From the NCBI RefSeq assembly GCF_001194135.2, contig NC_069000.1:44698046-44736869 (forward strand): a stretch of DNA of 38,824 nt, written 5' to 3'. Below the pieces are notes generated by a model. It did no database searches. It had not been told where the DNA came from and saw nothing but the letters and a program-made list of their open reading frames with translations. Every line of letters begins with the position of its first letter. Position 1 is the first letter of the stretch. The stretch is from Octopus bimaculoides. Lineage: Eukaryota. The translations under genes were made by a program, and so were the position numbers. Shown piece after piece: positions 217 to 37,930 of the stretch.

Positions 217-405
217 CTCTTTGCTCACATCTTTGTCCATACCATCCTGTTGCACAACCTCTTATACAATAACCAGTTTGTTTGTCACATGGTTCTCTGT
301 TTTTACATTGGCCACACTTTTTAATTCCTTTGCGGAAGATATAATAGCCAAGTGGACATGTCCTTACATGATAACGAGGCTCAGGTTTTGCCACAACTCT
401 AGTTA
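217..405 (-). CDS. Linker + Cys-rich repeat exon C (189 nt, 7 Cys)
   Basis: CAG/GTGAGT; [62 protein letters not shown]. Confidence 0.9.
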
Positions 406-471
406 CTGTAAATAAAAATTTTATTTGTGTTAGAAAAAAATATTCTAAAATAATGCATATTATCATTATCA

Positions 472-506
<35 letters not shown>

Positions 507-516
507 NNNNNNNNNN

Positions 517-555
<39 letters not shown>

Positions 556-3500
556 CATCATGTTATTATTCTTATTATTATCTTCTTTCAATTTTGTTTT
601 CATTTCTTGCTGAGTGTCTTCCTAACAGCTAGGACAAAGAAATTCATTGTATACATTGGTAGGCCATCAAAATAAACATACCAGATTGTTCATGACCACT
701 AAGTCATGTGATAGAAAAAGAAGGGGAGGAAAAACAGAGAGAAAAAGGAAAAAAAAAAAATTTTATGAAAACAATAAAACAAAGAAAATAAAGGGGGAAA
801 AGGAAAGAAAATTCACTATTATTATTATTATTATTATTATTATTGTAAATGATAAATTATTAAATTTTTTATTAGAAACGGTTATAATAATATAATTTCT
901 TGCATTTACATAAATACAGAAATTAATATATTCAAGTTATAGTTGATTTTACTGACATCCAATATACAATCGTTCCAAACAGCAGCTTAATAATGTCAGA
1001 GTAATTTTGTTAAATTCCTCATAATTCTCAAAATTAATTGAAGCAAAGACAGAATATTCCAACAGAGATATGATTTACAAAAATCTTGAAGTGATTTAAT
1101 CTGAAGCTTTTCATTAAAATTTCATGATAATTTATGTTCTAATTAGCAACTTAACAATGACAAAGTTATCTTAGTAAATTCCTCATTATTTTCAAAATTA
1201 ATTGAAACAAAGTCAGTGTATTCCAACAGAATTGTGGTAACAAAAGACTTAAACTCTGCTTTTCTCAGAAATAAAAAGAGTTTTCTGACATTTACCTCTT
1301 TGCTGACACTTTCGTCCATACCATCCTGGTTCACAACCCCATCTACAATTGCCAGTCTGTGTGTCACATGGGTATCCATCTTTACACTGACCACATCTTC
1401 TACAGCTCTTATGGTGGATATATTGACCAGTTGGACATGTTATACGAAAAGGAGTGTCAGGTTTTTCATAAGTTGTTTCTGTAAATAAATAAATGAACAA
1501 TTATATTAATTTCAGTAAAGGTAATTTGTAGAAATAAAACTTCAAAAATTATTACAATGAAATATTTTTCAGAATATTCATGATCCTTAATTTACACAGA
1601 CTGGATAGAGTAGGGGGCTACTATTTGGGAGTCTAATTGAGGCCCCATCTCGTGAAGCCTTGTTTGCTTAAGAGGCCATTGCTTACATCCAGCAAACACA
1701 GGTGAAAACAGGGACAGGTATGAACTTACACAATCACGCACTTGCACACACATACACACACACACACATATGATGGGCTTCTTTCAGTTTCTGCCTACCA
1801 AATCCATTCATAATGCTTCTGTTAACCTAGGGTTGTAGTTGAACACACTTTTCCAATGTACGATGAAATGGGATTAAATCCAAAACTACATGGTTGGAAA
1901 CTACATGTTTGGACTACATGGTTGGGAAACAAGCTCCATAACCTCACAACCAATGTAAATACCTGCACACAATTATTAAGTGTTAAAAATATAACATTTT
2001 TTTAAAAATTCATTTCATTTTATATTTAATAGAATTGTGTAATCTAATTTGGATGAAAGCTTGGAATGGAAATTAATTTTTTAATTAATTAATTCTCATT
2101 TAACATTTATTATATTGCAAAATCTTGTCAGTTAGACAAGGTTTGCAGGAGAAACCTTGTTAGGCTGTGCTTAGGGTATTATTTGGGCCTTAGTGTGGCC
2201 CTGCTCTTCTCATAAGAGTTACAGAGATTTACTTGCATAGCAAATGTCTTGATTTGTGGGGTTGTGTTCTGAAACTGAAACAATTGCAGCATAGAAGACA
2301 CAAGTTAACCACACAGAAATATTCAAAGATCGTCAGCTTTGCTTAGATATTTATTTGTAATATGGTGACAAAAGTTTTGTTGCCACAAACTGCAACATTG
2401 TTACTGTGAAAACCTGAACTTTGTCTCAAAGTCTTCTAATACTTACCTCTTTGGTGACACTTCTGTCCATACCATCCTGGTTCACAACCTCGTACACAAT
2501 CACCAGTCCAGTTGTCACATGGCTGTCTACCTTTACATTGACCACATCTTCGACATCCACCTTGGTCAATATATTTACCGAGTGGACACCTCGTTACTAC
2601 TGGTTGAGGATATGGCACATGGACCACATTGTAATTAACTGTAAATAATTAATTATTCATTACATCTGTGTCAGCAAAAAATGTCAACAAGGAAAATAAC
2701 AACAACAGCAAAAAAAAAACAAAATCCCTGTAAAAAGAAAAAGAAAATAGGATAACAAAAAAACATTTCAAAATCATCAAAACATGGAATTCATTTGAAT
2801 TCCCTAAATTTAAAATTATAAAAAAAAAGGAAACTGTTTTTAAAAATATAAATACATTTTTTCATAATGCCACTTGTAAAAAATATAGACAAAAAAAAAC
2901 ACAAAATGAACAAACAATTTTATCTGAACCAAACTTGTTAACAAGAATATTTGGTATAATTTACTCACCAAATATTATTCCATCCAGTCTTAGAAAAATC
3001 AGGAATCTCCACTTACCCCAGAGTTTTTTTTTTNNNNNNNNNNNNNNNNNNNNNNNNNNNNNNNNNNNNNNNNNNNNNNNNNNNNNNNNNNNNNNNNNNN
3101 NNNNNNNNNNNNNNNNNNNNNNNNNNNNNNNNNNNNNNNNNNNNNNNNNNNNNNNNNNNNNNNNNNNNNNNNNNNNNNNNNNNNNNNNNNNNNNNNNNNN
3201 NNNNNNNNNNNNNNNNNNNNNNNNNNNNNNNNNNNNNNNNNNNNNNNNNGCCAGCCCCCTTCAATGTTTGGCAGCATAAGCACTTTTCTGACCCTTTAGC
3301 ATTCAGATTACTCTCTCAAATGTAATTCGAATTTATTCACACTGCCTTGAATTAATCCTGCATTATCTCAGAGCATCAAGATTTCAATGAATTAATTGTT
3401 TATTTTAAGAATGACATTGTAGGGTAGATATGAAAGACTCTAGCAGAATATTTGACCCGGATAAATCCCCCTTTAAATTCTAAAAAGGGTTAAACCCTTC

Positions 3501-6500
3501 GCTTCCTATGGAGCATTTGCCATCAATGATGTTTCTTCACCATTTTCAACTCTGAGATGTCTTTTCTACTTCTCCTCTTCCAAGTCTTTGATTCTTCTGT
3601 AACCTTCCTTTTTTGTTTTTTTTTATTCTAGGTGCTGGTGCCGCATGAAAAGTACCCTTGCTGATTCTACACAAGAAAGCACTGGTTCTGGTGCTACATA
3701 AAAAGCACTTAGTGCACCCTGCAAAGAAGCTGGTATTAGGAAGGGCATCCAGCTGTAGAAACCATGCCAAAACAGACAATTGAAACTTGGTGCTGCTCTT
3801 TGGTTTGCCAGCTCCAGTCAAATTGTCCAACCCATGCCAGCATGGAAGCCAGACATTATATGATGACGATGACGATGATGATGGTGGTGGTGATGTAGGA
3901 GCGTTGGCGCTACACAGACCCACTTTTAATTCTGAGAAGAAGTGGTCCATATTAGTCTAACCTCTGTCCTTTGACTTATCCGGCATGGGAAATCCTACCA
4001 GGAGCATGTGCTCTGCAGGCAAAGCTCTCAGGGTCAATGAGGCATGCATGCCACCGCCACCCCCCACAGCAAGAACTGCATCTTGTGGTGCCATTATGAC
4101 ATCAGAGGAACTGGCACAGCATTTTCACTAGTGTTGTCTCAGGTAGTCTTCAAGTAATATTTTCTCTTTTCTTTTTTCTTTTTCCATTTCACATACAGTA
4201 CTGGGTTAGGAATTGAACTTAAAATATTTATTTCTGACTATATTTGCTTCTTTAACCACTTGTTCCGCCACCTCAACACATGCACGACAGTTAGTAATTA
4301 CAAATAATGTGTTTCCAAGCAAGGTAATATTTCACTCTTGGCCTAATGTTTTTTATCACAGAAGACTAGGATCGCTTGTATGACAGTGATGCTCATTTAC
4401 GACCTTCGTGTGATGTCAAGGCAAGGATACACACTCACATACACAACAGACTTCTTTCAGTTTCCATCTTTCAAATCCACTCTTTTGCTATAGCTCGAGG
4501 CTGTAATAGAAGATACTTGCTCAAGGTGGCATGCAGTGGAACTGAACCCATGACTAGATGACTAGGAAGCAAGCTTCTTAACAACACAGCCATACTTGTG
4601 CCTTTTAATAATAAATTAAAATTGACATAGGAAAAAAGGATAAAAAGGATAGCTTGTTTTACCTCACACAATAATAATTTAAACCATTAACAGATTCATG
4701 CTGAGAAATTGGCTTTCTTATAAATATAAATTAGAGAAAAACAAATTTTAGATAATTTAATATTATTAAGGTAAAAATGTAATTTGTTAGATTCAATAGC
4801 TTTAGAATTTTAAATATTTTAAGTGTTAGCTGTAATTATTATGTATTAAAGCTTTACTAGGTTTTTGGTTTAATTTTCCAACTGTTAAGTAGCTTAGAAT
4901 AAAATATAGATTAATTTATTCAATTATAAATTTATCATTATTATACTTTTATATGAGTAAGTTATTTATGTAATTATGTATTATTATAATTTATTAATTT
5001 ATTAATTAATTATGATTATATTTATATAATATGTGCATAATTTATTTATGTAATTATATATCATAATTTATTAATTCATAAATTAAAACAGGTTTTAATA
5101 AATGAAGCATTATATTGTTGGTTTATGATGAACAAAATGTTAATTATAAATATTTTAGCAAATGTTAATTTTAATTATTTTAGCAAATGTTAATTTTAAA
5201 TATTTTAACAAAATATTACCTTAAAATTAATAAAACTTCACTTTTTTCAATCAATGTCTAGATACGATCTAAATTTAAACTTTAAAACAAAAAAACTAAA
5301 ATAAACGAACTGTTAAATTATAATTGATTAAAAATATTATGTTTTTTTTTCCTCATTATATTCAAAATAAGAAATTTTGAAGTAAGATGAAGAAAACATC
5401 ATAGCTTACTAGAATCAAATCTGTAACCACTTTTGGTATCGCAACCTAAGAATTATAATGAAAGTTTAAATTAAATCATTTATTCGTTAAAAAAAGAGAA
5501 TCTCCATTGAGTTAAATGATTACTTTGTATCCATGTATTAAATATATTCAAAATATTTATGGATATGACTTAGCAGTTCGGCAAAAGAGACCGATAGAAT
5601 AAGTACCAGGCTTAGAAGATATCCTGTTTACATTTTTACTTCACCCACAGTAAGGCTTTTTAATATTTAAATTCATTTTCTGTTCTTATGATTCATTCTG
5701 TATCATGCATAAAATAGATATAGTTTAGTTTATTGATGAGATGCCTAATTTATGACTGCTTTATATAGTAGCTGAACATTCTACACTATTTATTTGGGAG
5801 TGAAAGTGGGTAAGAATTCTCAGAGGAGTGGTCAACAAACCATGAAATATTTCATTAGAAGACTCCTTCTTCTCTTTTCCAAACATCAAAAGCATAAAAA
5901 GCAATGTATTTACATTTTTATTTAATTCACAGCAGGGCTTTGTAATATTTTATATACATTAAGGCAGCAAGCTAGCATAAATATTAGCATGCTGGGTGAA
6001 ATGCTTAGCGGTATATCGTCTGTCTTTATGTTCTGAATTCAAATTCTGCCGAGGTTGACTTTGCCTTTCATCCTTTTGAGGTCAATAAATTAAGTACCAG
6101 TTACATACTGAGGTCGATCTAATTGATTGGCCTCTTCCCCAAAAATTTTGGGCCTTGTGCTTAGAGCAGAAAAGAATATTTTATATACCTTTCTGTTCTT
6201 ATGATTTATGTTGTCATGCGTAAAAATATGTATTATTTAATTTAGTGATGAGCTGCCAAAAGCACAAATATGCAAATTACACTATCCACTGTGGTGCAAG
6301 TGTAATTTCATGACTCCTTTATATGGTAACTGAATATTTTATGCTGTTTACAGGTGAATGAAAACAGGTGGGTCTCCTCAGAGAAGCAACCAACAAACTG
6401 TGAAATGCTCAACCCGAAGACTCCCTTCTCTTTTTTCCAAGCATCAAAAGCATAAATGGAATGTGTTCACATTTTTATTTAACCCACAGCAAAGCCTTGT

Positions 6501-8574
6501 ACAAATTACTTAGAATTCAAATAAGGGTGAAGGTCTAAATTTTTCTTTCTTTTTTTTCTTTCCTTAATTTAAAGGTCCTTTAAGGTAGAGGACTGGCAGA
6601 ACCGTTGAGCACAGACAACTGCCTTGTGGTATTTCTTCCGGTTCTTTGCATTTCAGTTCAAATCCTGACAAGGTCAGGTCTCTTATCCCTCCAGAACAAA
6701 TAAAATAACCCCTCCCCTCAAAATTGCTGACTTTATGCTTAAATGAAAACCAATTTAAAGGTACATTTATGTTTTAAAGGTACATTTATTTTTCAATAAT
6801 TTAAAAAAATATTTTTACACTTGTTTTATTAGTTAAGCAAGACTCTATCAGACACAATGCTGAAATCAAGACAATGCACATGGTCACTAGAAATAGCAGC
6901 TAATCCTTCCTCAAATCCCTTGCCACCATCTTAAACAAAAGTTAGGGTATATTTATTATAATGTAGTCTTAGAAAGACCTAAATAGATTGGATGGTCATG
7001 GATGGAGTGCCTATGATCATTGGTTGACCGAATCATGATCAACCTCAAGTAAAAACAACAGCAATGTAACATAGACAAAGCAGATAATCGTAAATCTGTT
7101 TGAATCTAATGAATTGGTCTGATGGTTAACAAATCAGACAGAATAATTTGTGGTATTTCTTGTGAACCTCTGTTCTCTGAATTCAAATCACACTGAGGTC
7201 AACTTTACTATTTATTTTATTTTATTTATTTATTGGATGTCAGTAAATTGCATCTCAAAACTACAGCCAATTCTTTTCCTTCTACACCATTTCTCTTTGT
7301 CTTTCTCTTTCCTCTTTGAAAGGGCCTGGCTATGGTCAGACCTAGAGAGAGACACACAGTAGAATGCTCTGCCTGGTTTTAAAAATACACAAGAGACATA
7401 TGTCATAATGATACCCTTGTTAGTCTGTGAGGAGTTGAGAGGGGCAAGACAGGGCAAGGCAGCACAAGAAAGAGCAAGGCAGTGCTAGACAGGGCAAGGC
7501 AGCGCAAGACAGGGCAAGGCATAAAGTTTACTCTCAGCATTACTGGTATTCATTTCAACTGAGCAGGATGAAATGATGAACCCTGCTCAAAGTTATGTTG
7601 TGCAACTCAATCCAGGAATTGAATTTATGATCATCAGCACAAACCCCTAACCACTTGGTCATGTGCCCTCATTATTAAAGTTGATAATAAAATCAACATC
7701 AAATGATAAACATTCTGCATTATGTTCAGACATGGCACATCTGGAGCTACATCATCTAGGTGGCACAAATTCTAACTACACAATTTGTCTGAACATCCAT
7801 AAACATTGAATAAAATCACTAAGTTAACCCTTTCGTTACCAACCCGGCTGAAACTGCCTCTGACTCTGTAGTACAAATGTCTTATTTCCATCAGTTTTGA
7901 ATTAAAATCTTCCACCAAACCTTAGTCACAATTTATGTTCCTAACACTAGCTGAATGATAACTAAGTTAATTTATTAAATTCTTTGTGATATTTAAAGTA
8001 ATTGAAAGAAACACAGCGCATCTCAACAGAAATACAGTAACGAAAGGGTTAAACACATCACCTAATGAACCCACAAAATAAAGGTCCTCATTTAAATAGC
8101 TACACTGCTAAAATAAAATATCTTAAATATGCATTTAATTCTTGTTTATAGTGTCCAACAACTATATTTCAAGGAAAACTGATGTCATTCTAATGACTAT
8201 AAAATAATTTCAGTCTCACCTGTTTTCTTAACATTACATCTTTCACCTGTCCATCCGTCAAGACATCCAAAACGGCAATATCCAGTACGAGGTTCACATC
8301 CTACGCTATCTCGGCAATGGAGACATCTTGATTGGCACATATCACCGAAAAATCCTTGGGCACAGACTGTAAAGTGGAAAACAATTTTTTAATTAATCTC
8401 CAGGTTTCTTTTATTTTTTTCTTTGTAAACAAAACTTTTTATAAAAATTTTTGTCTCTATTCTTGCTTCCATTTTTGGAAAATTCTATTTTTTAATATTA
8501 TTTATTTATTATCCTTGAAAAAATAAACGCTTTTACTCGAAACTACAAACTTTCTATTTTCATTACACTTTCTT

Positions 8575-8605
<31 letters not shown>

Positions 8606-29025: not shown

Positions 29026-29084
<59 letters not shown>

Positions 29085-29094
29085 CTTAGATAGA

Positions 29095-29137
<43 letters not shown>

Positions 29138-29781
29138 GTAAGTAGGTAGGTAGGTAGGTAGGTAGGTAGGTAGGTAGGTAGGTAGGTAGGTAGGTAGACT
29201 AGACAGACAGACAGACGACAGACAAACAGACGACAGACAAACAGACAGACGGACAGACATAGACAGACAGACATAGACAGACAGACATAGACAGACAGAC
29301 ATAGACAGACAGACATAGACAGACAGACATAGACAGACAGANNNNNNNNNNGACATAGACAGACAGACATAGACAGACAGACATAGACAGACAGACATAG
29401 ACAGACAGACACCACACACATACACACACACACACACACACACGGATATGCATACATACATATGCATTTCAATAAACACATGTATTGTCCGTTCATCCAT
29501 GCATACAGGCTTGTGGACAGACGGACGGATGGACGGACAAAGCCGAGAGTGGAGACAAGCAAAAAGATTAAATATTTGGTGGTACGAACTTTCAGAACAA
29601 AGGTCTCCTTCGTACCCAGGACTGCAAATACATTGGAACCTGTTGCCAATCATCATGCAGGTACCACCATTCTGGCAGGGAAGAGAATAACAGACATTGA
29701 CTGGAAAAGACAAAATATAAAAATGGTCAGTTTATAAAACAAAGAGAAGGAAACAAATAGACATCAAAATTTTTTATTTGA

Positions 29782-29813
<32 letters not shown>

Positions 29814-32800
29814 AGAACTGTGATCGTCATGGTAAAAAAAAATGGGGAAAACATACTCAAAACATTATGTAAAATAACAACCATCACTGAAAAGACATTT
29901 ATAGACAGCCTAGGTTCTGTACTAAATTCTCTTTGTTCTGATTGGTTGATCTGTTTTCAGTTCGGCCAGATTTTAGCAGAAGTTTTTCTAATTCTCTCCA
30001 TATTTGAAATTCAGCTGAGAATAAAAACACTAAGAAACCAGAGAAGTGGTCTTAATACTTTTAATCTTTGTCTTCAACAAGTCTCTCGGATGTTCTTATC
30101 CATGACTGTGTTGTCTTCCCATCATCTTGTAGGTCTCCCTACTGGTCTCTTCCTATCTCCTGGATCCCACTTGAGAACTACATGGATCTGCCTTGCAATG
30201 TGCCTGGCCCAGTAGCACTTGTGCCTTCAGTGTTCTGTGACCACATCATTCACTTCACTTTATTTTTGAAATACCTCAATTCAGACACTCTCCATGAATA
30301 TCCATGTCATAGCCATTTGTGGTTCTTCCTTTTCTGTAGTAGCTGGCATCTCACAAGAGCGCAAGTAGGGTGTTCCTATTGAAGGGATTTGCACATCAGG
30401 TCTTGTGCAGCTGTACTTAGAGCACAACTTTTATCAAGGTAAACACCATCCACTCTGTTCTTACTCACAATGGGACTTCAGCATTCATGCCTTGACAGAT
30501 GGATAATGGATCACCTAATAAACTTTAAAATAAATTCCCCCACATATATGTACAAATGTTATTTATAAATAAAGTTGTCTTCTTGTGCAAAACACTTCAT
30601 TTACCATTATTCAGTGCTCACTTCCACATCTAACACGTGACACTCTGTACACCTGTTCAGGTTAATGGAAGGAGTGAACTAATGTAAACTACACACCTTT
30701 GGTTGCTGTAAACAAATCATCTGTGTAGATCTTTAGTAAGAAATTGCAGAACCCTCACCTGTCGCATACGGCAAGAGAGTTCGCAATTTATAAAGTAATT
30801 GACAGATAGATATATCAATAGACTAATAGGAAAATAACATTTATTATAATGAATACATTTATACTCACAGTATTCACAATTACTGCCACTGTAACCTGAG
30901 GAACATTCACAGTGGTAAGCGTATTCTTTAGCAACACATTTCCCACCATTTCTGCAAGGTTTCGTCGAACAGTAATCATCTGGAAATTAAAAAATAAACA
31001 TTTACATTTAACAAAATATTTTTTTTTTTCAATTAATATAGGGTTAGGAGCAAATTTTGTAAAGAAGGGTCATCACTGACTAGACAAACTCCAGTATATT
31101 ATTAGCCCAATAACAAAATTCAATTGGTCAAATTAATCTCATAAGGACTTGCTTATCAAAAGAATTAAACATTGTATTGCATTTAGTCCATGCTCTAAAA
31201 GTAGCAGTCCTGGCCCCTTATATTTTTTTAAATTACAACAGTCAAGATACAAGAGGCACTGCTGGTGACCTTTTCAGATATTCTTCCTACACAAGTGTGT
31301 GATTATTGTGACACCCAACTGACACCCAACCAGAACATTTGAATGTTAAACCTGAGCTAAAAGGCTTTGTTGGTGCAACTAGGGCCATCTCAACAATATT
31401 ATAGTTCTCCTGACAAAGCATATGGAGATTAGCAACAGGCTTCTTGGTCCATGAGACTTCCAGACTAAGAAAATTCACTGTGGCCTGTAGTATTTATTTA
31501 TTGGCAGCATATCACACTGTATATAAATTAGCAAAGAGCTCTTAGATGTGTGGGGGCCCCAAGCAAATCAATGCATTATGGCCTGTTCCTTTTTATTCAC
31601 AACAAACCATAACTTATTTAGATGAGCAATGCGATCATGGGGCCTCTGGGCAAATCCACTTGAGTCTATAATAGTTATTTATTGGCAACAAACCATAGAT
31701 TGTCAAGGGGTTCCTAGACTTGGCGGGCCTATAGAATCTATTAGGGCCTCTAAAATTTATTAGGGCCTCTAGAATCCATTTGGGTGTACAGAATTTATTG
31801 ACAACAAACCACCACAGACATAGATTGTAATTGGGTTCTCAGACATGAGGGACCTGTGAACAATGACTCTGTGTGCCAATCTTTTAAGACAATGAAGGGC
31901 GCCACCAAAAATCAACAGAAGCCATGGAAAAGTTACAGAAATATGAACAGAACACAAAAAAATGAAAAATAAGAAGAAAAAAATAGTTAGCCAGTGGGAA
32001 AAGAAAAGATTTAGAATGGTCAATGGGCTATTTATTCTGCTGGAAAGTTACAAAAATTCCTACTTACAGATTTCGCATTGGTCTCCTTTGAAGCCAATTT
32101 GACAGATACATGTGTAAACAGAGCCTTTCTTTATACAAACTCCACCATTTCTGCAAGGCTGTTTATTGCAAACATCAACTATAAAAGATTAAATGAAGAA
32201 AACCACAAAATTAGAAGAATTTAATAAAACGTTGATTCATTTGAGGTCACCAAGGAAACGTGGCTTGTGTTGAATTTCTTGAAGCTGAATGTTATTCCTG
32301 ACACCAATACATCCAAGACCACCCCTCCTGGTTCTATAATACAAACTTCTTGTTTTAAACTGATCTAAATTGAAACCATCCATCAAAATTTCATATTAAC
32401 TCTCCTGTTTTAACCGTTTTGTTACTGTATTTATTTTGAGATACTCCATGTTTCTTTCAATTAATTTTAAATATAACAAAGAATTTAGTAAAATAATTTT
32501 GTTATCGTTAAGCTAGTGTTAGGAACATAAATTGTAACTAAGATTTGGTAGAAGATTTTAATTCAGAACTTTTGGAAACAAGACATTTGTACTACAGAGC
32601 TAGAGGCAGTTTCAGGTAGGTTGGTGTCAAAAGGGTTAAGAATTGTTTCTCCATTATATATTTTAACCCTTTTGTTACCATATTTCTGTTGGGATGCTCT
32701 GCGTTTCATCCAATTAATTTTGAATATAACAAAGAATTTAGTAAAATAATTTCGTTATCATTAAACTTTTGTTAGGAACATAAATTGTGACTAAGGTTTG

Positions 32801-33873
32801 GTGGAAGATTTTAATTCAAAACTTATGAAAACATGACATTTGTACTCAGAGCCAGAACCGGTTTCAGCCAGGTTGGAAAGAGTTAAATGTCAGCTTAATA
32901 ACAACAAAGATATCTTATTAAATGTTTCATTATTTTCAAGCCTAATTAAAACAATTGCAACAGAGAAATGGTAACAAAAGGATTAAAGTGATCTAAATTA
33001 AAACCTTCCATTAAATTCTATGTTAACCTATGTTCTAAGTATGCAACATCATCATCATCATCATCTTATCATAATCATCATTTAACATCTGTTTTCCAAG
33101 TTGGCATGGGTTGGATGGCTTGAGAAGGGATGGTTAGACAAAAGACTACACCAGGCTTTGCAGTCTGTTTTGGCAGGGTTTTTACATCTGAATGCCCTTC
33201 CTAACGCTAACCACTCTACAGTGTGGACTGGATGCACCGGCACTGGCAGGGCCACCAAACAGCTTGCAAGGCAAAGATCCTTTGAGAAGTGGCGGGGGGG
33301 GGGGCACTGAAGGAGATGGTTTTGTGCCAGGTGAAGAGAAGTTAGAGTGTGACAGAGGGATAAAAACAGGTGTCTTGCTGCAGAGGAGATACATGGTTAA
33401 CCGGTAACCATGTAACATTGGAAATAATCTGGGCTGAGGACAGACTATAACTGAGAATGACATTGGGGTGGTTAGGAACGCGGGTGCTAGTGGGGTGGGA
33501 AGATGTAGAAGTGAGAAGATGTCATTGCTACTTACAGACGTTGCAGTGATTGTCAATGTATCCAATGGGACAGATGCAAGTATAGTCATTGCCAACGTTG
33601 AGGCAGGTACCACTGTTCATGCAGGGAGAAGAGACACAAGCATTATCTGGAAAGGAATGGAAAATACAATGTTACTAGTGAGAATATTCCTTTATTAATT
33701 ACTCATTATAAACATAGAATATGAAGAACACAAACATATGTGTGTGTGTGCATGTAGATGTATATATGCATGTGTGTGTGTTAGAGAGAGGCAGAGATAG
33801 ATAGATAGATAGACAGATTGTCTGTCCTTGTTTGTCCCCTCTATGTTTAGCCCCTTGTGGGCTATAAAGAAAT

Positions 33874-33928
<55 letters not shown>

Positions 33929-33937
33929 GTAGGTAGG

Positions 33938-33975
<38 letters not shown>

Positions 33976-33988
33976 CATAGATAGATAC

Positions 33989-34021
<33 letters not shown>

Positions 34022-34042
34022 AGAGATAGATAAGACAGACAG

Positions 34043-34085
<43 letters not shown>

Positions 34086-36523
34086 AACAGACAGACAGAC
34101 AGACAGATAGATATGTATATACATAAGTATGCCTGTGTATGTGTTTGTGTGACCTTAAAGACCATTATATTAATGAATTCATAGACGTTGGCATATGTAG
34201 AATTTGTACTTACAAACGTTGCATCGATGACCAGTGAAGCCAGATGGACAGTCACATTGGAAAGTATACTCGAAGGTTTTGCAGGTTCCACCATTCAAAC
34301 AAGGTGAGTTGAAGCAGGCATTGACTGTGGAACGTGAATAAATAAGAAATTCAAATGAAATTGAATGCTAACACACTTTTTGGTATCTCTTTAAAAAAAT
34401 GTCAAACTCATACCAATATGGACATTAAAAGCAGAGATAAAAAATCCTGAATATTATTTTGGCAAGTTTCAAGCGATTTCTTTTGTGCTGTAAACCATTT
34501 ACCATTTCTGCGGTGCCCCCTCCTTCCCTTGATGCCCTAAGCATATACTTATTTTGCTTAACGGTTAATCCAGTGCTGCTTTATTTACAGGGCTTTTGTG
34601 ACTGACAGATGTGCAAAAAGGACGAAAGTATCCACAGACTAGGGACCTAAGGAGATCTCATCTGTTTCTCCAGACCAATTGACAGAACAATTCAGATCTT
34701 TAGAGGGTGAATTGTAAGCACGTACCTACAATTCCAAATGCACAGGGTGGTTGGGTTTGTTGGCTGCCCCAACAGAGGGCAACCTGTAATGCCACATGGT
34801 GGACTTAAGTTTGCTACTCAAGCAGGCCATGGAGGGATTCGAACTCAGAATGCAAAAGCAATGGAAGAAACAACCACAAGGAATCTATTACGATGTCCTT
34901 GTAACTCCAGTAATTCCACTGGTCTGGAATGGTACTTTTGTGTCTCAACTTCCAAAGGGGCAAAAGGTAAAGCTAATGATGATGACGACAATGACAACAT
35001 CAACAACGGTGATGAAGGCAACAACAATGACAACGATGATGATGATGATGATGATGATATCATCATCATCATGGAGGTGGTGGTGGTAGCAGTGGTCGTG
35101 GTGATGCTGGTGATAATGATGGTGATGATGATGATGATGATGAGAGTGATGATAATGATGACGACAATGATAACATCAACAACGGTAATGAAGGCAACAA
35201 CAATGATAACAATGATGGTGATGATGATGATGATGATGATGTTGAATTTGAAAGACTTCGCCAGAACGTAAAACTACTCACAATTTTCACAATGTTCCCC
35301 GCTATATTGGTAAGAACATCTACAGGTGTAACCACTGCCACGGTTGGTACAGGTACCACCATGCTTACAGGGGCTGTTTTCACAGTAGTTACCTGAAAGA
35401 GAGAGAGAGAGAGAGAGAGACTAAGTAGTTTGATGCATAAAGCGATTGAGCATACAATAACAGTAAAAAATTTGGGGCACAAGTCTAGCAATCTTAACGG
35501 TTGGGCTTAAATGGATTGCCTTGACCTTAGTGCTTGGTTGGTATTTATTTTATTGACCCAGAAGTAATGAAAGACGAAGTCAGCCTTGGTAGCATTTGAA
35601 CTCAGAATGTTAAACCAGAAGAAATGCTGCTTAGCATTTTGTCCATTGTGCCGACGATTCTGTTAGCTTTCTGAGTAAAATGGATGTAGAGTGGGAGGAG
35701 ATGGAGGGAGGGAGATGGAAGGAGGGAGATGGAAGGAGGGAGAGCAAGAGAGACAGAGGGAGGGGGAGTGAGATGGAGTGAGAAACAGAGAGAGGGAGGA
35801 AGGGAGAAAGAGATGGAGGGAGAGAGAAAGAGAAGCGGGGAGATAGACAGAGAGAGAAAGAGGGAGAGAAAGAGAGTGAAAGTGAGGGAGAGAGAGAAAG
35901 AGAGCAAAAATAAGAGAGAGGAACTATTGTCTTTCGTTTTCCATGTCATCAATTATTTTTATAATTGGTATAACATTAAACTGCATCTGGTGGTGAGGCT
36001 CCAGCTTGGGAGTTCAGAAGTCAGTGGGGTAATCACAGAGTTATTTCTTTGTCTCCACTCTTCTCAGTTCTGCTCTGGTCCAGGCTAGCAGCACCTGTTA
36101 AGGGCCTCAGTTAGGGGTCAAATAGCAGAAAATGGTCCTGTGACTGAGGTATACAGGAGTTGGAAGAGGGTTGATCCCTACCCATGTGTTACACAGACAA
36201 AGAAACAAGGATCTTAAAATCCAGACCGATACTTTTTAAGTACTCTGGGGCCAACTAGATCAACCAGTGAGAAACATTAGATTCTGCACGACTGGTTTAG
36301 GTGTATCTCTCAATGTTGATGTGTCTCCTCAGGTGATTTCAAGAGGCATCTCGTTAAAATAAACTTTGTTTCATACAACTTATTACTGCATGCACGTGCG
36401 TGTCTGTATGTATGTGCATGTGGGTGTGCACATGTGTATGTGTGTTTGAGTATGTGTGCGCATGCGCATGTGTATGGAAATATATAGTAAGAATTTGTAT
36501 TCTAATCACTTATATATGCTTAT

Positions 36524-36587
<64 letters not shown>

Positions 36588-37003
36588 GAGAGATAATAAA
36601 TGTAGTACTTACGTGTCTCACAAGTGGGACCAGTGTAGGTAGAAATACAGTTACATCTAAAGGTTTTGCCAACCACATAGCAAGTTCCAGAATTTTTACA
36701 GGGACCATCAGAGCAATAATCAACTGGAAAAGTAAGAACAAGTTTAAAACATCTGTAAGACGTTGGATGTCTTGCAAACAAGTTATCTGTTACTGAAGCA
36801 CATTTGCATTGAAAAGACACTATTTTATATAAATAATAGTTGCTATATTTCATTTACTAATTGCCATCCCTGAAGAGTGAAGGGTTATAAAATCAGACTG
36901 TTACCTAACACTCTGTTGAGCCTCTAATGCAAAACCAGTTGGAAAGATTGGCCATAATGGATACATACTATTGTACACTTTAATCAATCAATGAATCAGT
37001 ATG

Positions 37004-37042
<39 letters not shown>

Positions 37043-37372: not shown

Positions 37373-37405
<33 letters not shown>

Positions 37406-37677
37406 GATATTTTAAAATCCATGGCAACATACATATTCACTGATTCTGTCACATCATCAATGTATCATATCTGAAAAAGAGGCACACTACAAAGCATAGA
37501 GGTGAAGAGTTACATTTGTTATAGGCTTTAGAGTTTGATGAGATGCTCACAAGGCCAAAGCCTTCATGGATGCGAAACCATTGGTCACTCTATGACCGAA
37601 CATTAACTTTATTACTTTAATATATATCCATATATATAAGAGAAAGAGAGGATAGATAGATAGATAGACAGACAGAC

Positions 37678-37712
<35 letters not shown>

Positions 37713-37930
37713 GGAACACAGATATATTTTCCTTAAGGTGAGAGAATCATATTATTCACACACACACACACACACATATGAAATATGAGTGAAATAATAC
37801 AAAAAATGCATTAACTTACATGTAGAGCAGTCAGTACCAAGATAACCGGGTCTACATCTACATGTGTAAGAAACATCAGTGGTCATACAGCTTCCACCAT
37901 TGAGGCAAGGATTTGAGTAACAGAAGTCGA
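217..37930 (-). CDS. Partial multi-exon gene: >=23 EGF-like repeats + atypical C-type lectin domain + >=4 MEGF/laminin-EGF-like Cys repeats (predicted large extracellular protein; 5' and 3' ends outside window)
   Basis: 29 manually delimited exons, all AG/GT-bounded and phase 1-1, join into a stop-free 3678-nt frame. Joining of the three exons at 217-2638 to the rest (across a 5.6-kb intron containing an N gap) is inferred from phase compatibility only. Confidence 0.85.
1296..1478 (-). CDS. Linker + Cys-rich repeat exon B (183 nt)
   Basis: CAG/GTAAAT; [60 protein letters not shown]. Confidence 0.9.
2447..2638 (-). CDS. Linker + Cys-rich (MEGF/laminin-EGF-like) repeat exon A (192 nt)
   Basis: CAG/GTAAGT; [63 protein letters not shown]. 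Confidence 0.9.
5680..6500 (+). repeat. Two diverged ~270-320-bp direct copies (~5680-5945, ~6190-6500) flanking a SINE
   Basis: Shared TTCTGTTCTTATGATT...GAAGACTCC.TTCT...CATCAAAAGCATAAA...ACATTTTTATTTAA..CACAGC. Confidence 0.75.
5961..6180 (+). mobile_element. tRNA-headed SINE, family A (Deu/Nin-like central domain)
   Basis: B-box-like GAATTCAAATTC followed by GACTTTGCCTTTCATCCTTT.G.GGTC.ATAAATTAAGTACCAG; related copies + at ~13406-13601, ~14030-14325, ~16845-17050, ~27015-27230; - at ~10450-10550, ~35535-35665. Confidence 0.75.
7441..7521. repeat. 20-bp tandem repeat (GCAAGACAGGGCAAGGCAGC)~4
   Basis: Direct read. Confidence 0.85.
7828..8048. mobile_element. piggyBac-like MITE (221 bp)
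   Basis: TTAA|CCCTTTCGTTAC...GTAACGAAAGGG|TTAA: perfect 12-bp TIR with TTAA on both sides. Confidence 0.85.
8220..8366 (-). CDS. MEGF10/SCARF-type 8-Cys EGF-like repeat exon (147 nt; absent from ORF track)
   Basis: CAG/GTGAGA; [48 protein letters not shown]. Confidence 0.9.
8578..8880. repeat. Compound (CA)/(TA)/(CATA) microsatellite
   Basis: Low complexity; source of several spurious ORFs. Confidence 0.95.
8958..9179 (-). CDS. C-type lectin-like domain, C-terminal exon (222 nt)
   Basis: CAG/GTAAGT; [73 protein letters not shown]; WIGL-like WVGA, FEW, W..xP, terminal YICE. Confidence 0.88.
9426..9825 (-). mobile_element. SINE family B copy
   Basis: Reverse complement of the 28675 element (TTTCTTTCAGTTTCC.TCTA.CAAATCCACTCACAAGGCTTT). 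Confidence 0.7.
10145..10336 (-). CDS. C-type lectin-like domain, N-terminal exon (192 nt; absent from ORF track)
   Basis: TAG/GTAAGT; [63 protein letters not shown]; fits long-form CTLD start (CP..., xCYYL, A..xC, E..YV helix 2). Confidence 0.88.
11344..11454 (-). CDS. EGF exon 23 (111 nt; only EGF exon ending in G)
   Basis: CAG/GTGAGT; [36 protein letters not shown]. Confidence 0.95.
12310..13135. repeat. Diverged ~80-bp purine-rich tandem repeat (12310-12640, resuming ~13005-13135)
   Basis: Recurrent AGAATATGGTAAAA.AGAATATA.AGGAATGTAG unit. Confidence 0.75.
12825..12990 (+). mobile_element. RTE-like LINE 3' fragment
   Basis: [35 protein letters not shown] resembles the RTE C-terminal PRT.W.D...A.DR..W pattern. 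Confidence 0.55.
13174..13284 (-). CDS. EGF exon 22 (111 nt)
   Basis: CAG/GTGAGT; [36 protein letters not shown]. Confidence 0.95.
13406..13601 (+). mobile_element. SINE family A copy
   Basis: GGTGGTGAGCTGGCTGAATCGTTA...GACTTTGCATTTCATCCTTTTGGCGTCTATAAAATAAGTACCAG. Confidence 0.75.
13796..13906 (-). CDS. EGF exon 21 (111 nt)
   Basis: CAG/GTAAGT; [36 protein letters not shown]. Confidence 0.95.
14786..14896 (-). CDS. EGF exon 20 (111 nt)
   Basis: TAG/GTAAGT; [36 protein letters not shown]. Confidence 0.95.
15714..15824 (-). CDS. EGF exon 19 (111 nt)
   Basis: CAG/GTAAGT; [36 protein letters not shown]. Confidence 0.95.
16100..16590. repeat. Compound (TG)n-rich low-complexity tract
   Basis: Direct read. 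Confidence 0.95.
16627..16737 (-). CDS. EGF exon 18 (111 nt)
   Basis: CAG/GTAAGA; [36 protein letters not shown]. Confidence 0.95.
17180..17970 (+). mobile_element. Long composite SINE with internal tandem subrepeats and (GAT)n tail
   Basis: Family-B-like head, repeated GGTGGCAC.TAAAA.GCACC units, tail ATTAGGAAGGGCATCCAGCTGTAGAAAC...CCAACCCATGCCAGCATG...(GAT)n; same tail at ~3640-3890, ~20030-20315, ~22305-22490, ~25190-25350 (+) and ~33045-33200 (-). Confidence 0.7.
18219..18329 (-). CDS. EGF exon 17 (111 nt)
   Basis: CAG/GTAAGT; [36 protein letters not shown]. Confidence 0.95.
18975..19085 (-). CDS. EGF exon 16 (111 nt, 7 Cys)
   Basis: TAG/GTATGT; [36 protein letters not shown]. Confidence 0.95.
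19120..19690. repeat. Compound (TG)/(GA)/(GATA)/(GACA) microsatellite with N gap
   Basis: Direct read. Confidence 0.95.
20423..20533 (-). CDS. EGF exon 15 (111 nt)
   Basis: CAG/GTAAGT; [36 protein letters not shown]. Confidence 0.95.
20752..20949 (+). mobile_element. 5'-truncated R4/Dong-like (RLE) non-LTR retrotransposon fragment
   Basis: With two 1-nt frameshifts: [63 protein letters not shown]; abuts (TAA)n at 20691-20748. Confidence 0.7.
21170..21600. repeat. Diverged ~40-bp tandem repeat
   Basis: Recurrent GGTACTATAGG..GTCTTTGTTGATGTT motif. Confidence 0.65.
21720..21830 (-). CDS. EGF exon 14 (111 nt)
   Basis: CAG/GTGAGT; [36 protein letters not shown]. Confidence 0.95.
22758..22868 (-). 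CDS. EGF exon 13 (111 nt)
   Basis: CAG/GTAAGT; [36 protein letters not shown]. Confidence 0.95.
24397..24507 (-). CDS. EGF exon 12 (111 nt)
   Basis: CAG/GTAAGT; [36 protein letters not shown]. Confidence 0.95.
24927..25037 (-). CDS. EGF exon 11 (111 nt, 7 Cys)
   Basis: CAG/GTAAGT; [36 protein letters not shown]. Confidence 0.95.
25718..26606 (+). mobile_element. Internally deleted Tc1/mariner-superfamily DD37D (maT-like) DNA transposon relic
   Basis: Transposase remnant ~25930-26484: ...WQQDSAPC...[17 protein letters not shown]..., 37 residues between the last two Asp, two in-frame TGA. Imperfect 26-bp TIRs: CAGGATGCGATGGATAAATCGTCATC / revcomp CAGGGTGTGGTGAATATATTGTCATC. Confidence 0.9.
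26712..26822 (-). CDS. EGF exon 10 (111 nt)
   Basis: CAG/GTAAGT; [36 protein letters not shown]. Confidence 0.95.
27015..27230 (+). mobile_element. SINE family A copy
   Basis: Same head and central domain as the 5961 copy. Confidence 0.75.
27325..27754. mobile_element. hAT-type non-autonomous element (MITE)
   Basis: 8-bp TSD GATATATG at 27317-27324 and 27755-27762; imperfect TIR CAGGGCTGGATTAAG...CTTAATCCAG; partial second copy at ~34400-34578. Confidence 0.75.
27761..28157. mobile_element. TA-flanked MITE (Tc1/mariner-type)
   Basis: 24-bp TIR TGAGGAGCTTATTTTCAAAACCAG vs revcomp TGATGAGCTTACTTTCAAAACCAG (2 mismatches), TA on both sides. Confidence 0.8.
28353..28463 (-). CDS. EGF exon 9 (111 nt)
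   Basis: CAG/GTAAGT; [36 protein letters not shown]. Confidence 0.95.
28675..29025 (+). mobile_element. tRNA-headed SINE, family B (MIR/CORE-like CCTGGGCAAGTGACTT segment)
   Basis: A/B-box-like GGCTGTGTGGTAAG...GGGTTCAGTCCC; copies on - strand at ~1740-1960, ~4365-4602, ~9426-9825, ~38740-38824. Confidence 0.7.
29025..29465. repeat. Compound (GATA)/(GGTA)/(GACA)/(CA) microsatellite
   Basis: Direct read. Confidence 0.95.
29590..29700 (-). CDS. EGF exon 8 (111 nt, weak donor)
   Basis: CAG/GTTCGT; [36 protein letters not shown]. Confidence 0.9.
30060..30480 (-). mobile_element. RTE-clade LINE 3' fragment (decayed)
   Basis: Minus frame: [37 protein letters not shown], typical RTE C-terminal WAGH...W.P..KR..GRP..RW.D. 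Confidence 0.75.
30869..30979 (-). CDS. EGF exon 7 (111 nt)
   Basis: CAG/GTGAGT; [36 protein letters not shown]. Confidence 0.95.
32068..32178 (-). CDS. EGF exon 6 (111 nt)
   Basis: TAG/GTAAGT; [36 protein letters not shown]. Confidence 0.95.
32414..32882. mobile_element. Two adjacent copies of the same piggyBac-like MITE (32414-32635, 32667-32882), inverted relative to the 7828 copy
   Basis: Same internal sequence (ACATTTGTACT, GGAACATAAATTGT, AAAGAATTTAGTAAAATAA); TTAA flanks. Confidence 0.8.
33536..33646 (-). CDS. EGF exon 5 (111 nt)
   Basis: CAG/GTAAGT; [36 protein letters not shown]. Confidence 0.95.
33790..34145. repeat. Compound (GATA)/(GACA)/(GA) microsatellite
   Basis: Direct read. 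Confidence 0.95.
34214..34324 (-). CDS. EGF exon 4 (111 nt)
   Basis: CAG/GTAAGT; [36 protein letters not shown]. Confidence 0.95.
34400..34578. mobile_element. Partial copy of the hAT-type MITE at 27325
   Basis: Shared ATTTACCATTTCTG(T/C)GGTGC...TTAATCCAG end sequence. Confidence 0.7.
34975..35245. repeat. (GAT)/(AAC)/(GGT) trinucleotide tract
   Basis: Direct read. Confidence 0.9.
35282..35392 (-). CDS. EGF exon 3 (111 nt)
   Basis: CAG/GTGAGT; [36 protein letters not shown]. Confidence 0.95.
36613..36723 (-). CDS. EGF exon 2 (111 nt)
   Basis: CAG/GTAAGT; [36 protein letters not shown]. Confidence 0.95.
37820..37930 (-). CDS. EGF exon 1 (111 nt)
   Basis: CAG/GTAAGT; [36 protein letters not shown]. 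Confidence 0.95.

What the first reader, a model, noticed from the sequence alone, without database searches (positions are those of the whole stretch)
217..37930. Large modular EGF(x23+)-C-type lectin-MEGF-repeat protein built entirely from phase-1 exons
Seen: 29 exons, every intron phase 1, splicing into ~1226 stop-free codons with the order EGF x23, CTLD, MEGF/SCARF-type repeat, three further Cys repeats, running off both window ends. Known: EGF-CTLD pairs occur in lecticans (G3 domain) and MEGF10/SCARF/Draper-type repeats occur in scavenger receptors, but I do not recognise a conserved bilaterian family with this combination and order. Inference: a lineage-specific exon-shuffled extracellular recognition, adhesion or matrix protein. 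I recall EGF/C-type-lectin genes being described as an expanded octopus family; this is unverified, and the protein could belong to it.
Basis: partly seen in the sequence, partly recalled or inferred. Interest (0 to 1): 0.85.

Follow-up and report, generated by a model that had tools for sequence, protein, structure and literature searches.

The report
Octopus egg-thread protein gene, octovafibrin

Summary
The minus strand carries 29 AG/GT-bounded exons, all phase 1-1, which join into 3678 nt with no stop codon. They comprise 23 EGF exons of exactly 111 nt, a two-exon C-type lectin domain (CTLD), one 8-Cys MEGF-type module and three further related modules. All assembly gaps lie in introns.

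The gene is not an unrecognised family. Eighteen of the 22 MS/MS tryptic peptides published for octovafibrin map onto my spliced model, 15 of them exactly. Four of these span exon junctions (1/2, 23/24, 24/25, 25/26). Octovafibrin (NCBI XP_014771937.1; Wonderly et al. 2023) is the roughly 135 kDa protein of O. bimaculoides egg tethers. It consists of a signal peptide, a CTLD, 29 EGFs and a second CTLD. The window therefore encodes EGF 7-29 and the C-terminal end. The first six EGFs, the N-terminal CTLD and the signal peptide lie upstream of the window.

Exons 1-26 are thus confirmed at the protein level. The last three exons are modelled by NCBI as a separate "SCARF1-like" fragment. No published peptide maps to them, and they follow a 5.6 kb interval. 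Whether they belong to octovafibrin remains open.

Verdict: already known, low interest. The new details are the one-EGF-per-exon gene structure, a degenerate lectin site and an unreported C-terminal module.

The parts
37820..37930 (-). EGF exon 1 of the window (about EGF 7 of octovafibrin), 111 nt, phase 1-1
   Evidence: Peptide [10 protein letters not shown](S)TFDYCSDGP(C)K spans the junction to exon 2.
36613..36723 (-). EGF exon 2, 111 nt
   Evidence: Peptide [10 protein letters not shown] matches exactly.
35282..35392 (-). EGF exon 3, 111 nt
34214..34324 (-). EGF exon 4, 111 nt
33536..33646 (-). EGF exon 5, 111 nt
32068..32178 (-). EGF exon 6, 111 nt
   Evidence: Peptide [14 protein letters not shown] matches exactly.
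30869..30979 (-). EGF exon 7, 111 nt
29590..29700 (-). EGF exon 8, 111 nt; weakest donor of the set (gttcgt)
28353..28463 (-). EGF exon 9, 111 nt
26712..26822 (-). EGF exon 10, 111 nt
24927..25037 (-). EGF exon 11, 111 nt; carries a seventh Cys (GYCG)
24397..24507 (-). EGF exon 12, 111 nt
   Evidence: Peptide HYECSCR matches exactly.
22758..22868 (-). EGF exon 13, 111 nt
21720..21830 (-). EGF exon 14, 111 nt
20423..20533 (-). EGF exon 15, 111 nt
18975..19085 (-). EGF exon 16, 111 nt; carries a seventh Cys (GYCG)
   Evidence: Peptides [13 protein letters not shown] and [14 protein letters not shown] match exactly.
18219..18329 (-). EGF exon 17, 111 nt
   Evidence: Peptide [13 protein letters not shown] matches exactly.
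16627..16737 (-). EGF exon 18, 111 nt
   Evidence: Peptide QGLSFVC(S)CK matches nearly exactly.
15714..15824 (-). EGF exon 19, 111 nt
14786..14896 (-). EGF exon 20, 111 nt
13796..13906 (-). EGF exon 21, 111 nt
13174..13284 (-). EGF exon 22, 111 nt
11344..11454 (-). EGF exon 23 (last EGF, EGF 29 of octovafibrin), 111 nt
   Evidence: Peptide [16 protein letters not shown] matches exactly. [13 protein letters not shown] spans the junction to exon 24.
10145..10336 (-). C-terminal CTLD, first exon (192 nt)
   Evidence: Peptide SYEGAMNR matches exactly. CCSLK...GMASQTD(T)WVGAK spans the 24/25 junction.
8958..9179 (-). C-terminal CTLD, second exon (222 nt)
   Evidence: Peptides [39 protein letters not shown] and [13 protein letters not shown] match exactly.
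8220..8366 (-). 8-Cys MEGF-type module (147 nt), present in the thread protein; donor CAG|gtgaga
   Evidence: [22 protein letters not shown] spans the 25/26 junction. DSVGCEPR and [11 protein letters not shown] match exactly.
8197..8219 (-). Read-through of the exon 26 donor gives ...[10 protein letters not shown]-stop (TAG at 8199-8197); a possible C-terminus of the short form
   Evidence: inference only
2447..2638 (-). MEGF-type module with Pro-rich linker (192 nt); part of NCBI model XP_014771587.1; no published peptide
1296..1478 (-). MEGF-type module with linker (183 nt); about 80% nt identity to the modules in exons 27 and 29
217..405 (-). MEGF-type module with linker (189 nt), 7 Cys; its donor at 217 is still open, so the gene runs off the window
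3999..4094 (-). ATG-initiated first coding exon of NCBI model XP_014771587.1; it lies inside a dispersed repeat copy, so it is probably not a real start

Best explanation
The window is the 3' two-thirds of the octovafibrin gene of Octopus bimaculoides, on the minus strand. [quoted passage not shown] Its published layout is a signal peptide, an N-terminal C-type lectin domain (CTLD), 29 tandem 37-residue non-calcium-binding EGF domains and a C-terminal CTLD. The window encodes EGF 7-29, one per 111-nt phase-1 exon. It also encodes the C-terminal CTLD (two exons) and an 8-Cys MEGF-type module that is part of the mature protein. Shown by the published work: the thread dissolves only with reductant into one band of about 135 kDa; the three disulfides per EGF raise stiffness, toughness and energy dissipation; EGF beta-sheets unfold under load as hidden length; and EGTA has no mechanical effect. 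Proposed by the authors: the terminal lectin domains drive end-to-end assembly. Inferred here from the sequence: the C-terminal CTLD has none of the EPN/QPD or WND sugar/Ca motifs and has lost canonical Cys C2. It has seven Cys, an odd number. It is therefore more likely a protein-protein and disulfide cross-linking end-piece than a sugar-binding lectin. Two EGFs also carry an extra Cys. The three last exons (27-29) are most likely not part of the mature thread protein (about 0.6). They are either the remnant or ectodomain of a neighbouring MEGF10/SCARF-like gene, or an alternative or cleaved extension.
For: Identity: 15 of the 22 published octovafibrin MS/MS peptides match my spliced model exactly and 3 more nearly so. 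All 15 exact matches are preceded by K or R. Four of the matching peptides span exon junctions 1/2, 23/24, 24/25 and 25/26 (Table S1; mapping). The 37-residue repeat matches the published consensus (Cys at 5, 10, 16, 25, 27, 36; D/N at 3; Y/F at 23) when my columns are shifted by 2. Species: P0001 (O. bimaculoides XP_014771587.1) is 100% identical to exons 27-29. Domains: Pfam EGF and Lectin_C. None of the 23 EGFs has the cbEGF N-terminal motif, in agreement with the paper. CTLD alignment to tetranectin shows C2 replaced by Val and the QPD and WFD positions not conserved. There are 7 Cys in the CTLD. For the short form: 9-10 of the 11 predicted tryptic peptides of the CTLD plus exon 26 were reported, against 0 of 12 for exons 27-29. 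The interval between exons 26 and 27 is 5581 nt, against 419-1719 nt for all other introns. The estimated mass is about 153 kDa for the short form and at least 175 kDa with exons 27-29, against about 135 kDa on the gel. NCBI models the two parts separately.
Against: I could not retrieve XP_014771937.1 itself. It is absent from both protein libraries, so its exact ends and coordinates are not verified. Three or four published peptides are not in the window; I assume they come from the upstream EGF 1-6. Against the short form: the exon 26 donor is a consensus CAG|GTGAGA in phase 1 (top 4% of GT sites), and the exon 27 acceptor is in the top 1.8% of AG sites. Exon 26 is homologous to exons 27-29. 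The only annotated start for a separate downstream gene lies in a dispersed repeat and has no signal peptide. Table S1 may list only peptides that matched XP_014771937.1, which would bias the zero count for exons 27-29.
Confidence: 0.9

Rival explanations
1. One reading: all 29 exons make one protein, and octovafibrin continues past exon 26 into at least three more MEGF/SCARF-type modules, perhaps ending in a membrane anchor beyond the window. The thread protein would then be a shorter isoform or a cleaved product of this precursor.
For: All junctions are phase-1 compatible with no stop across 3678 nt. The exon 26 donor and exon 27 acceptor are good sites. Exon 26, which peptides prove is in the protein, is the same module type as exons 27-29. 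No credible independent 5' end for exons 27-29 exists in the window. Exons 27-29 show dN/dS of 0.4-0.6, so they are functional coding exons of some gene.
Against: None of the 12 predicted tryptic peptides of exons 27-29 appears in the published list, against 9-10 of 11 for the adjacent region. The 5.6 kb interval is an outlier. The gel mass of about 135 kDa is already below the short-form estimate. NCBI keeps the two parts as separate models.
Confidence: 0.28
2. The window holds a close paralogue of octovafibrin rather than the gene for the thread protein itself.
For: Octopus genomes hold other 37-residue EGF-array genes, for example the O. sinensis VWA-EGF-VWD protein P0018 at 45% identity and the O. 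bimaculoides protein P0019 at 36%. I could not fetch XP_014771937.1 to compare it residue by residue.
Against: Fifteen peptides match exactly, including 23- and 22-residue ones from the fast-diverging CTLD. The repeats within the gene are only about 43% identical to each other. A paralogue would need to be essentially identical over exons 2-26.
Confidence: 0.03
3. A novel lineage-specific recognition or scavenger receptor (EGF array, CTLD, MEGF repeats and a membrane anchor) acting in immunity or cell adhesion.
For: The C-terminal modules are most similar to mollusc proteins that automated annotation names MEGF10, PEAR1 or Draper-like. These have transmembrane tails, and half of those checked have an N-terminal lectin-like F5/8-C domain.
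Against: The protein was purified as the bulk component of an extracellular fibre. The CTLD lacks the sugar-binding motifs. No transmembrane exon is in the window.
Confidence: 0.05

Closest known systems
Octovafibrin (O. bimaculoides, NCBI XP_014771937.1; Wonderly et al. 2023, PMC10336842)
   Same: It is the same protein. The published tryptic peptides, the 37-residue EGF consensus, the absence of cbEGF motifs, the EGF array followed by a C-terminal CTLD, and the species all match.
   Different: The paper describes the C-terminus simply as a C-type lectin domain. The gene and the peptides show an extra 8-Cys MEGF-type module after the CTLD. The paper does not describe the gene structure of one EGF per 111-nt phase-1 exon. 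The paper also does not mention the three further modules encoded downstream.
Sea-urchin fibropellins (EGF arrays with terminal assembly domains in an extra-embryonic matrix)
   Same: Both have long arrays of Notch-type EGF domains flanked by non-EGF end domains thought to drive assembly into a fibrous extracellular layer of a marine invertebrate egg or embryo. The authors draw this comparison themselves. Fibropellin-like proteins are among the EGF hits.
   Different: Fibropellins have CUB/C1s-like and avidin-like ends, not CTLDs. Identity over the EGF array is only about 34-40%, which is generic EGF similarity.
Octopus VWA-EGF array-VWD proteins annotated as 'neurogenic locus notch homolog 1' (P0018 in O. 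sinensis, P0019 in O. bimaculoides)
   Same: These are the best database hits for the EGF array (45% and 36% identity). They share the 37-residue periodicity and have a signal peptide.
   Different: Their end domains are VWA and VWD/TIL, not CTLDs. The P0018 repeats are nearly identical to one another, whereas the octovafibrin repeats are only about 43% identical. They are paralogous arrays, not orthologues.
Mollusc MEGF10/PEAR1/Draper/SCARF-like receptors (P0002 Gigantopelta, P0005 Pomacea, P0007, P0010, P0012, P0014, P0015)
   Same: Exons 26-29 share their module pattern, CxxGxY(G)..C..CGxC.....CD..TGxC..GC.PGWxGxxC, at 32-43% identity to P0001 in the alignment.
   Different: Those proteins have many contiguous modules, a transmembrane helix and a cytoplasmic tail. 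Here only four modules are visible, three of them separated by Pro-rich linkers of about 18 residues, and no membrane anchor is in the window. Pfam EGF_laminin scores below its cut-off, and Foldseek gives no significant PDB match.
Lectican G3 domains and selectins (EGF next to a CTLD)
   Same: An EGF domain is adjacent to a CTLD in an extracellular protein.
   Different: Lecticans have 1-2 EGFs, a CTLD and a CCP at the end of a proteoglycan core. Selectins have a CTLD, one EGF, CCP repeats and a transmembrane segment, with a functional Ca/sugar site. Here there is no CCP, there are 29 EGFs, and the sugar site is degenerate.

Membership tests
Octovafibrin (the specific protein) | Sequence contains the MS/MS tryptic peptides obtained from the thread protein | tested here: met
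   15 exact and 3 near-exact matches out of 22. Four matches span exon junctions. All 15 exact matches are preceded by K or R.
Octovafibrin (the specific protein) | 37-residue EGF repeat with Cys at 5, 10, 16, 25, 27, 36, D/N at 3 and Y/F at 23 | tested here: met
   The column counts, shifted by 2, match the description read.
Octovafibrin (the specific protein) | 29 EGFs flanked by N- and C-terminal CTLDs, with a signal peptide | tested here: inconclusive
   The window holds 23 EGFs and the C-terminal CTLD. The N-terminal part lies beyond position 38824, and the record XP_014771937.1 was not retrievable.
EGF-like domain (Pfam PF00008, hEGF) | Six-Cys EGF profile match above the curated cut-off | tested here: met
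   E=5e-148 over 22 stretches. All six Cys are invariant in 23 of 23 repeats.
Calcium-binding EGF (cbEGF) | (D/N)-x-(D/N)-(E/Q) before Cys1, plus the Asx-hydroxylation consensus | tested here: not met
   None of 23 repeats has the N-terminal motif, and 9 of 23 have the C3-x-(D/N)-x4-(F/Y)-x-C4 part. EGF_CA is not among the Pfam hits. The paper reports no cbEGF by PROSITE and no EGTA effect.
C-type lectin-like domain (PF00059) | Profile match above the cut-off over the whole domain | tested here: met
   31 bits against 22.6, covering profile positions 2-106 of 107. The PDB sequence hits are tetranectin, NKG2A and codakine CTLDs.
Ca-dependent carbohydrate-binding C-type lectin | EPN or QPD motif, a WND motif, and the C2-C3 disulfide around Ca site 2 | tested here: not met
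   No EPN, QPD or WND is in the sequence. In the tetranectin alignment, C2 is replaced by Val and the WFD position reads HLY.
MEGF10 / SCARF / Draper-type receptors | Repeated 8-Cys laminin-type EGF modules | tested here: inconclusive
   The Cys pattern is shared with mollusc proteins given these names. However, EGF_laminin scores 19 bits against a cut-off of 21, there is no PDB sequence hit, and Foldseek's best match has E=0.017.
MEGF10 / SCARF / Draper-type receptors | Type I transmembrane segment and signalling tail; N-terminal EMI domain in MEGF10/Draper | not testable with these tools
   The reading frame runs off the window at position 217, and no flanking sequence could be fetched. No EMI domain was found in the window model.
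Lectican G3 / selectin | A CCP (sushi) domain next to the EGF-CTLD pair | tested here: not met
   No sushi or CCP match appears in the Pfam scans of the whole model.

The most novel reading that the evidence does not exclude
Octovafibrin may be transcribed as, or have evolved from, a longer precursor. In that precursor the C-terminal CTLD and 8-Cys module continue into MEGF10/SCARF-type modules (exons 27-29 and beyond), possibly ending in a membrane anchor. The fibre-forming protein would then be released by alternative 3' end formation or by proteolysis, loosely as zona-pellucida-type egg-coat proteins are released from membrane-anchored precursors. The egg-thread gene would in that case be a fusion of an EGF array with a mollusc receptor of the type 'lectin domain plus MEGF stalk'.
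Probability: 0.25. Interest if true: 0.45.

Novelty: already known. Interest (0 to 1): 0.15.

Why it matters
The protein matters as a model for how intramolecular disulfide-locked EGF domains give toughness to an extracellular fibre, but that case has already been made in print. This re-analysis adds small points. It gives the gene structure: 23 or more EGF domains, each on its own 111-nt phase-1 exon, with old duplications (about 53% nt identity and saturated synonymous sites). It shows that the C-terminal "lectin" has a degenerate sugar site and an odd number of Cys, which fits the reductant-dependent solubility of the thread. It identifies an unreported 8-Cys module in the mature protein. 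It finds many Notch-type O-glycosylation sequons. It also shows that the neighbouring NCBI model, "SCARF1-like" XP_014771587.1, is an unreliable fragment whose relation to octovafibrin is unresolved.

Tried and rejected
1. I looked for an annotated protein covering the exons. The search for homologous proteins with the CTLD/MEGF part returned only the 227-aa fragment P0001 at 100% identity. With the EGF array plus CTLD, nothing exceeded 45% identity. Neither octovafibrin itself nor any cephalopod orthologue is in that library, so I draw no conclusion about lineage restriction.

2. The look-up of encoding contigs for P0001 found no record, so the flanks could not be extended.

Run with CTLD exon B alone, it gave only spurious hits to repetitive proteins and no self hit.

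4. I predicted the structure of P0001 from a 9-sequence alignment. The modules are confident (pLDDT about 90) and the linkers disordered. Foldseek against the PDB found nothing significant; the best matches were Jagged, Notch, integrin I-EGF and R-spondin, all at E of 0.017 or worse.

5. PDB sequence search with the four C-terminal modules gave no hit.

6. Poly(A) signals occur after the exon 26 read-through stop (ATTAAA at 8139, AATAAA at 7976), but not more often than the background of 2.7 per kb. This is not informative.

7. Splice-site PWM scores for the exon 26 donor and exon 27 acceptor are intermediate and do not decide the question.

8. Pfam scans of eight intronic ORFs gave nothing above the curated cut-offs; the only hit, CED4_WHD, scored below its cut-off. 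An Rfam scan of the window gave no family.

9. Literature searches found no support for an octopus EGF/C-type-lectin family expansion.

10. I considered that the CTLD second exon might be terminal, because read-through gives YICESKYN-stop. I rejected this because the peptide [22 protein letters not shown] proves splicing to exon 26.

Full report
**1. What is in the sequence**

The window is AT-rich (36% GC) and contains eight runs of N. All coding signal lies on the minus strand. A pattern scan of the six-frame translation found 23 stop-free segments with a six-Cys EGF signature, spaced about 1-2 kb apart.

Each segment has one clear acceptor, a pyrimidine tract followed by AG, two codons before Cys1. 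Each has a GTAAGT- or GTGAGT-type donor exactly 111 nt later. The apparent seventh "Cys" at the end of many segments is the T|GT of the donor.

Downstream lie six more exons:
- two exons that together encode a C-type lectin-like domain (10336-10145 and 9179-8958);
- one 8-Cys module (8366-8220);
- three longer modules (2638-2447, 1478-1296 and 405-217).

All 29 exons are AG/GT-bounded, are multiples of three in length, and are separated by phase-1 introns. Joined, they give 3678 nt with no stop codon.

**2. Gaps**

No N run touches an exon. Seven lie in introns and one lies upstream of exon 1.

Because every exon is phase 1-1, an exon lost in a gap would not be visible as a frame break. The DNA alone therefore gives a minimum exon count.

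Three gaps are flanked by near-identical sequence: 24235-24282 matches 24293-24340 at 100%, and 19170-19259 and 38034-38117 match the far sides of their gaps at 94-99%. This looks like overlapping contig ends.

**3. Domains**

Pfam finds EGF in 22 stretches (E=5e-148), with no EGF_CA match. It finds Lectin_C at 31 bits against a cut-off of 22.6 when the CTLD is scanned alone. EGF_laminin scores below its cut-off for the C-terminal modules (19 versus 21 bits).

The 23 EGF repeats align without a single indel. All six Cys and Pro7 are invariant, while Asn10 (21 of 23), Gly12 (22 of 23) and Gly31 (22 of 23) are nearly so. Overall identity between repeats is only 43% at the amino-acid level and 53% at the nucleotide level, and neighbours are no more alike than distant repeats. 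Synonymous differences between repeats are saturated (pS 0.77) and pN is 0.40. The array is therefore old and held under structural constraint.

**4. Identification**

The last three exons are 100% identical to XP_014771587.1, "scavenger receptor class F member 1-like", of Octopus bimaculoides. This fixes the species.

A full-text search for Octopus bimaculoides, C-type lectin and EGF returned Wonderly et al. 2023 (PMC10336842). That paper describes octovafibrin as follows:
- Its NCBI accession is XP_014771937.1.
- It consists of a signal peptide, an N-terminal CTLD, 29 EGF domains of 37 residues and a C-terminal CTLD.
- The EGF consensus has Cys at 5, 10, 16, 25, 27 and 36, D/N at 3 and Y/F at 23.
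- None of the EGFs is calcium-binding.

That consensus is identical to mine once my columns are shifted by two.

The paper's Table S1 lists 22 MS/MS tryptic peptides. I mapped them to the spliced model.
- Fifteen match exactly. All fifteen are preceded by K or R.
- Three more match apart from one or two dropped residues, which look like transcription slips.
- Four of the matching peptides cross exon junctions: [10 protein letters not shown](S)TFDYCSDGP(C)K (1/2), [13 protein letters not shown] (23/24), CCSLK...GMASQTD(T)WVGAK (24/25) and [22 protein letters not shown] (25/26).
- Three peptides (NGGICIIDGYEYKCK, CKCPKPYFGK, CTCKPAYVGPR) are absent from the window, and FTCHCR finds only a poor match there. 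All are EGF-like and presumably come from the six EGFs upstream.

The window is therefore the octovafibrin gene from about EGF 7 to the C-terminus.

**5. How it works**

Shown in the paper:
- The threads resist extraction until a reductant is added, and then release a single band.
- Reducing the disulfides lowers stiffness and toughness.
- WAXS and coarse-grained simulation indicate that EGF beta-sheets unfold under load as hidden length.
- EGTA has no mechanical effect.
- Thread calcium equals that of ambient sea water.

Proposed by the authors: end-to-end assembly through the terminal lectin domains.

Added here from the sequence:
- None of the 23 EGFs has the (D/N)-x-(D/N)-(E/Q) cbEGF motif.
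- The C-terminal CTLD has no EPN, QPD or WND motif. In HMMER alignments to tetranectin, canonical Cys C2 is replaced by Val. Ca-dependent sugar binding is therefore unlikely.
- The CTLD has seven Cys, so at least one should be unpaired or paired between chains. This is a candidate for the intermolecular disulfides implied by the need for a reductant. It is inference only.
- EGF exons 11 and 16 each carry an extra Cys at the same position, GYCG.
- Consensus sequons known from Notch-type EGFs (my own knowledge of the POGLUT1, POFUT1 and EOGT consensus motifs) are frequent: C1-x-S-x-P-C2 in 17 of 23 repeats, C2-x4-(S/T)-C3 in 15 of 23, and C5-xxG(Y/F)(S/T)Gxx-C6 in 8 of 23. The paper does not discuss glycosylation.
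- The mature protein contains an 8-Cys MEGF-type module after the CTLD, shown by peptides [19 protein letters not shown] and the 25/26 junction peptide. The paper's domain scheme does not separate this module.

**6. The open point: exons 27-29**

Evidence for a break after exon 26:
- NCBI models the two parts separately.
- The interval is 5581 nt, whereas all other introns are 419-1719 nt.
- Reading through the donor gives GETEIIL and then a stop.
- Nine or ten of the 11 predicted tryptic peptides of the CTLD plus exon 26 were reported, but none of the 12 predicted for exons 27-29.
- The estimated mass is about 153 kDa without exons 27-29 and at least 175 kDa with them, against about 135 kDa on the gel.

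Evidence for continuity:
- The phases are compatible.
- The exon 26 donor is a consensus CAG|GTGAGA, and the exon 27 acceptor is good.
- Exon 26 is homologous to exons 27-29.
- The only annotated start for the downstream fragment, at 4094-3999, lies in a dispersed repeat copy (3904-4094 resembles 23013-23199). It lacks a signal peptide, and its junction to exon 27 cannot be reproduced with canonical sites.

Exons 27-29 are about 80% identical to each other in DNA and show dN/dS of 0.4-0.6, so they are real coding exons of some gene.

Their nearest relatives are mollusc proteins that automated annotation calls MEGF10, PEAR1 or Draper-like. These have transmembrane tails, and four of the eight checked have an N-terminal F5/8-type-C lectin-like domain. 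This makes a "lectin domain plus MEGF stalk" receptor a plausible ancestor of the octovafibrin 3' end.

I put the short form at about 0.6, a long precursor or isoform at about 0.25-0.3, and leave the rest undecided.

**7. Limits**

Neither protein library contains octovafibrin. There is no 100% hit, and no self hit. The absence of cephalopod orthologues in those searches therefore says nothing about lineage restriction.

The closest array proteins found are paralogues with VWA and VWD ends (P0018, P0019).

**8. Verdict**

Novelty: already known. Interest is low. The only point of moderate interest is whether the egg-thread gene continues into, or was built from, a MEGF10/SCARF-like receptor gene.

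Noticed in passing
window 24235-24340, 19170-19433, 38034-38233: N gaps are flanked by near-identical sequence: 48 nt at 100%, 90 nt at 94% and 84 nt at 99%. This suggests overlapping contig ends or collapsed tandem repeats rather than truly missing sequence.
   Followed up: partly
window 3689-3897, 17779-17975, 20081-20283, 22324-22486, 33046-33204: A dispersed repeat family of about 170-200 nt (70-80% identity, both orientations) sits in several introns of the gene. No Rfam family or Pfam domain was found for it.
   Followed up: partly
window 3904-4094 versus 23013-23199: The ATG-initiated first coding exon of NCBI model XP_014771587.1 (4094-3999, MAPQDAV...) lies in a second dispersed repeat, which has a 69% identical inverted copy in another intron. 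Its splice to exon 27 is offset by 3 nt from the canonical AG. The model's N-terminus is probably an artefact.
   Followed up: yes
window 7824-8057, 32406-32639, 32661-32876; 9562-9834 versus 28671-28936; 5959-6160 versus 27013-27215; 27603-27752 versus 34430-34577: Further intronic interspersed repeat families at 78-86% identity. One is present as a tandem pair at 32406-32876, with an inverted copy just downstream of exon 26.
   Followed up: no
window 25876-26223 (+): A 115-aa ORF inside the intron between EGF exons 10 and 11 looks to me, from memory only, like a fragment of a DDE transposase. Pfam gave no match at E<=0.01.
   Followed up: partly
window 8576-8924, 16072-16608, 18424-18940, 19052-19800, 29089-29650, 33699-34294, 35069-35950: Long microsatellite and low-complexity tracts, for example (CA)n, (TC)n and TATC-type repeats, fill many introns. 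They create long spurious Cys-, Ser- or Leu-rich ORFs on both strands.
   Followed up: no
window 12312-12687 and 38021-38233: Tandem duplications of about 80 nt and about 20-60 nt units lie in the intron after EGF exon 22 and upstream of exon 1.
   Followed up: no
P0018 (O. sinensis) and P0019 (O. bimaculoides), not in the window: Octopus genomes encode other secreted proteins with long arrays of 37-residue EGF repeats, flanked by VWA and VWD/TIL domains and annotated as 'notch homolog 1'. The P0018 repeats are almost identical to each other, unlike those of octovafibrin.
   Followed up: partly
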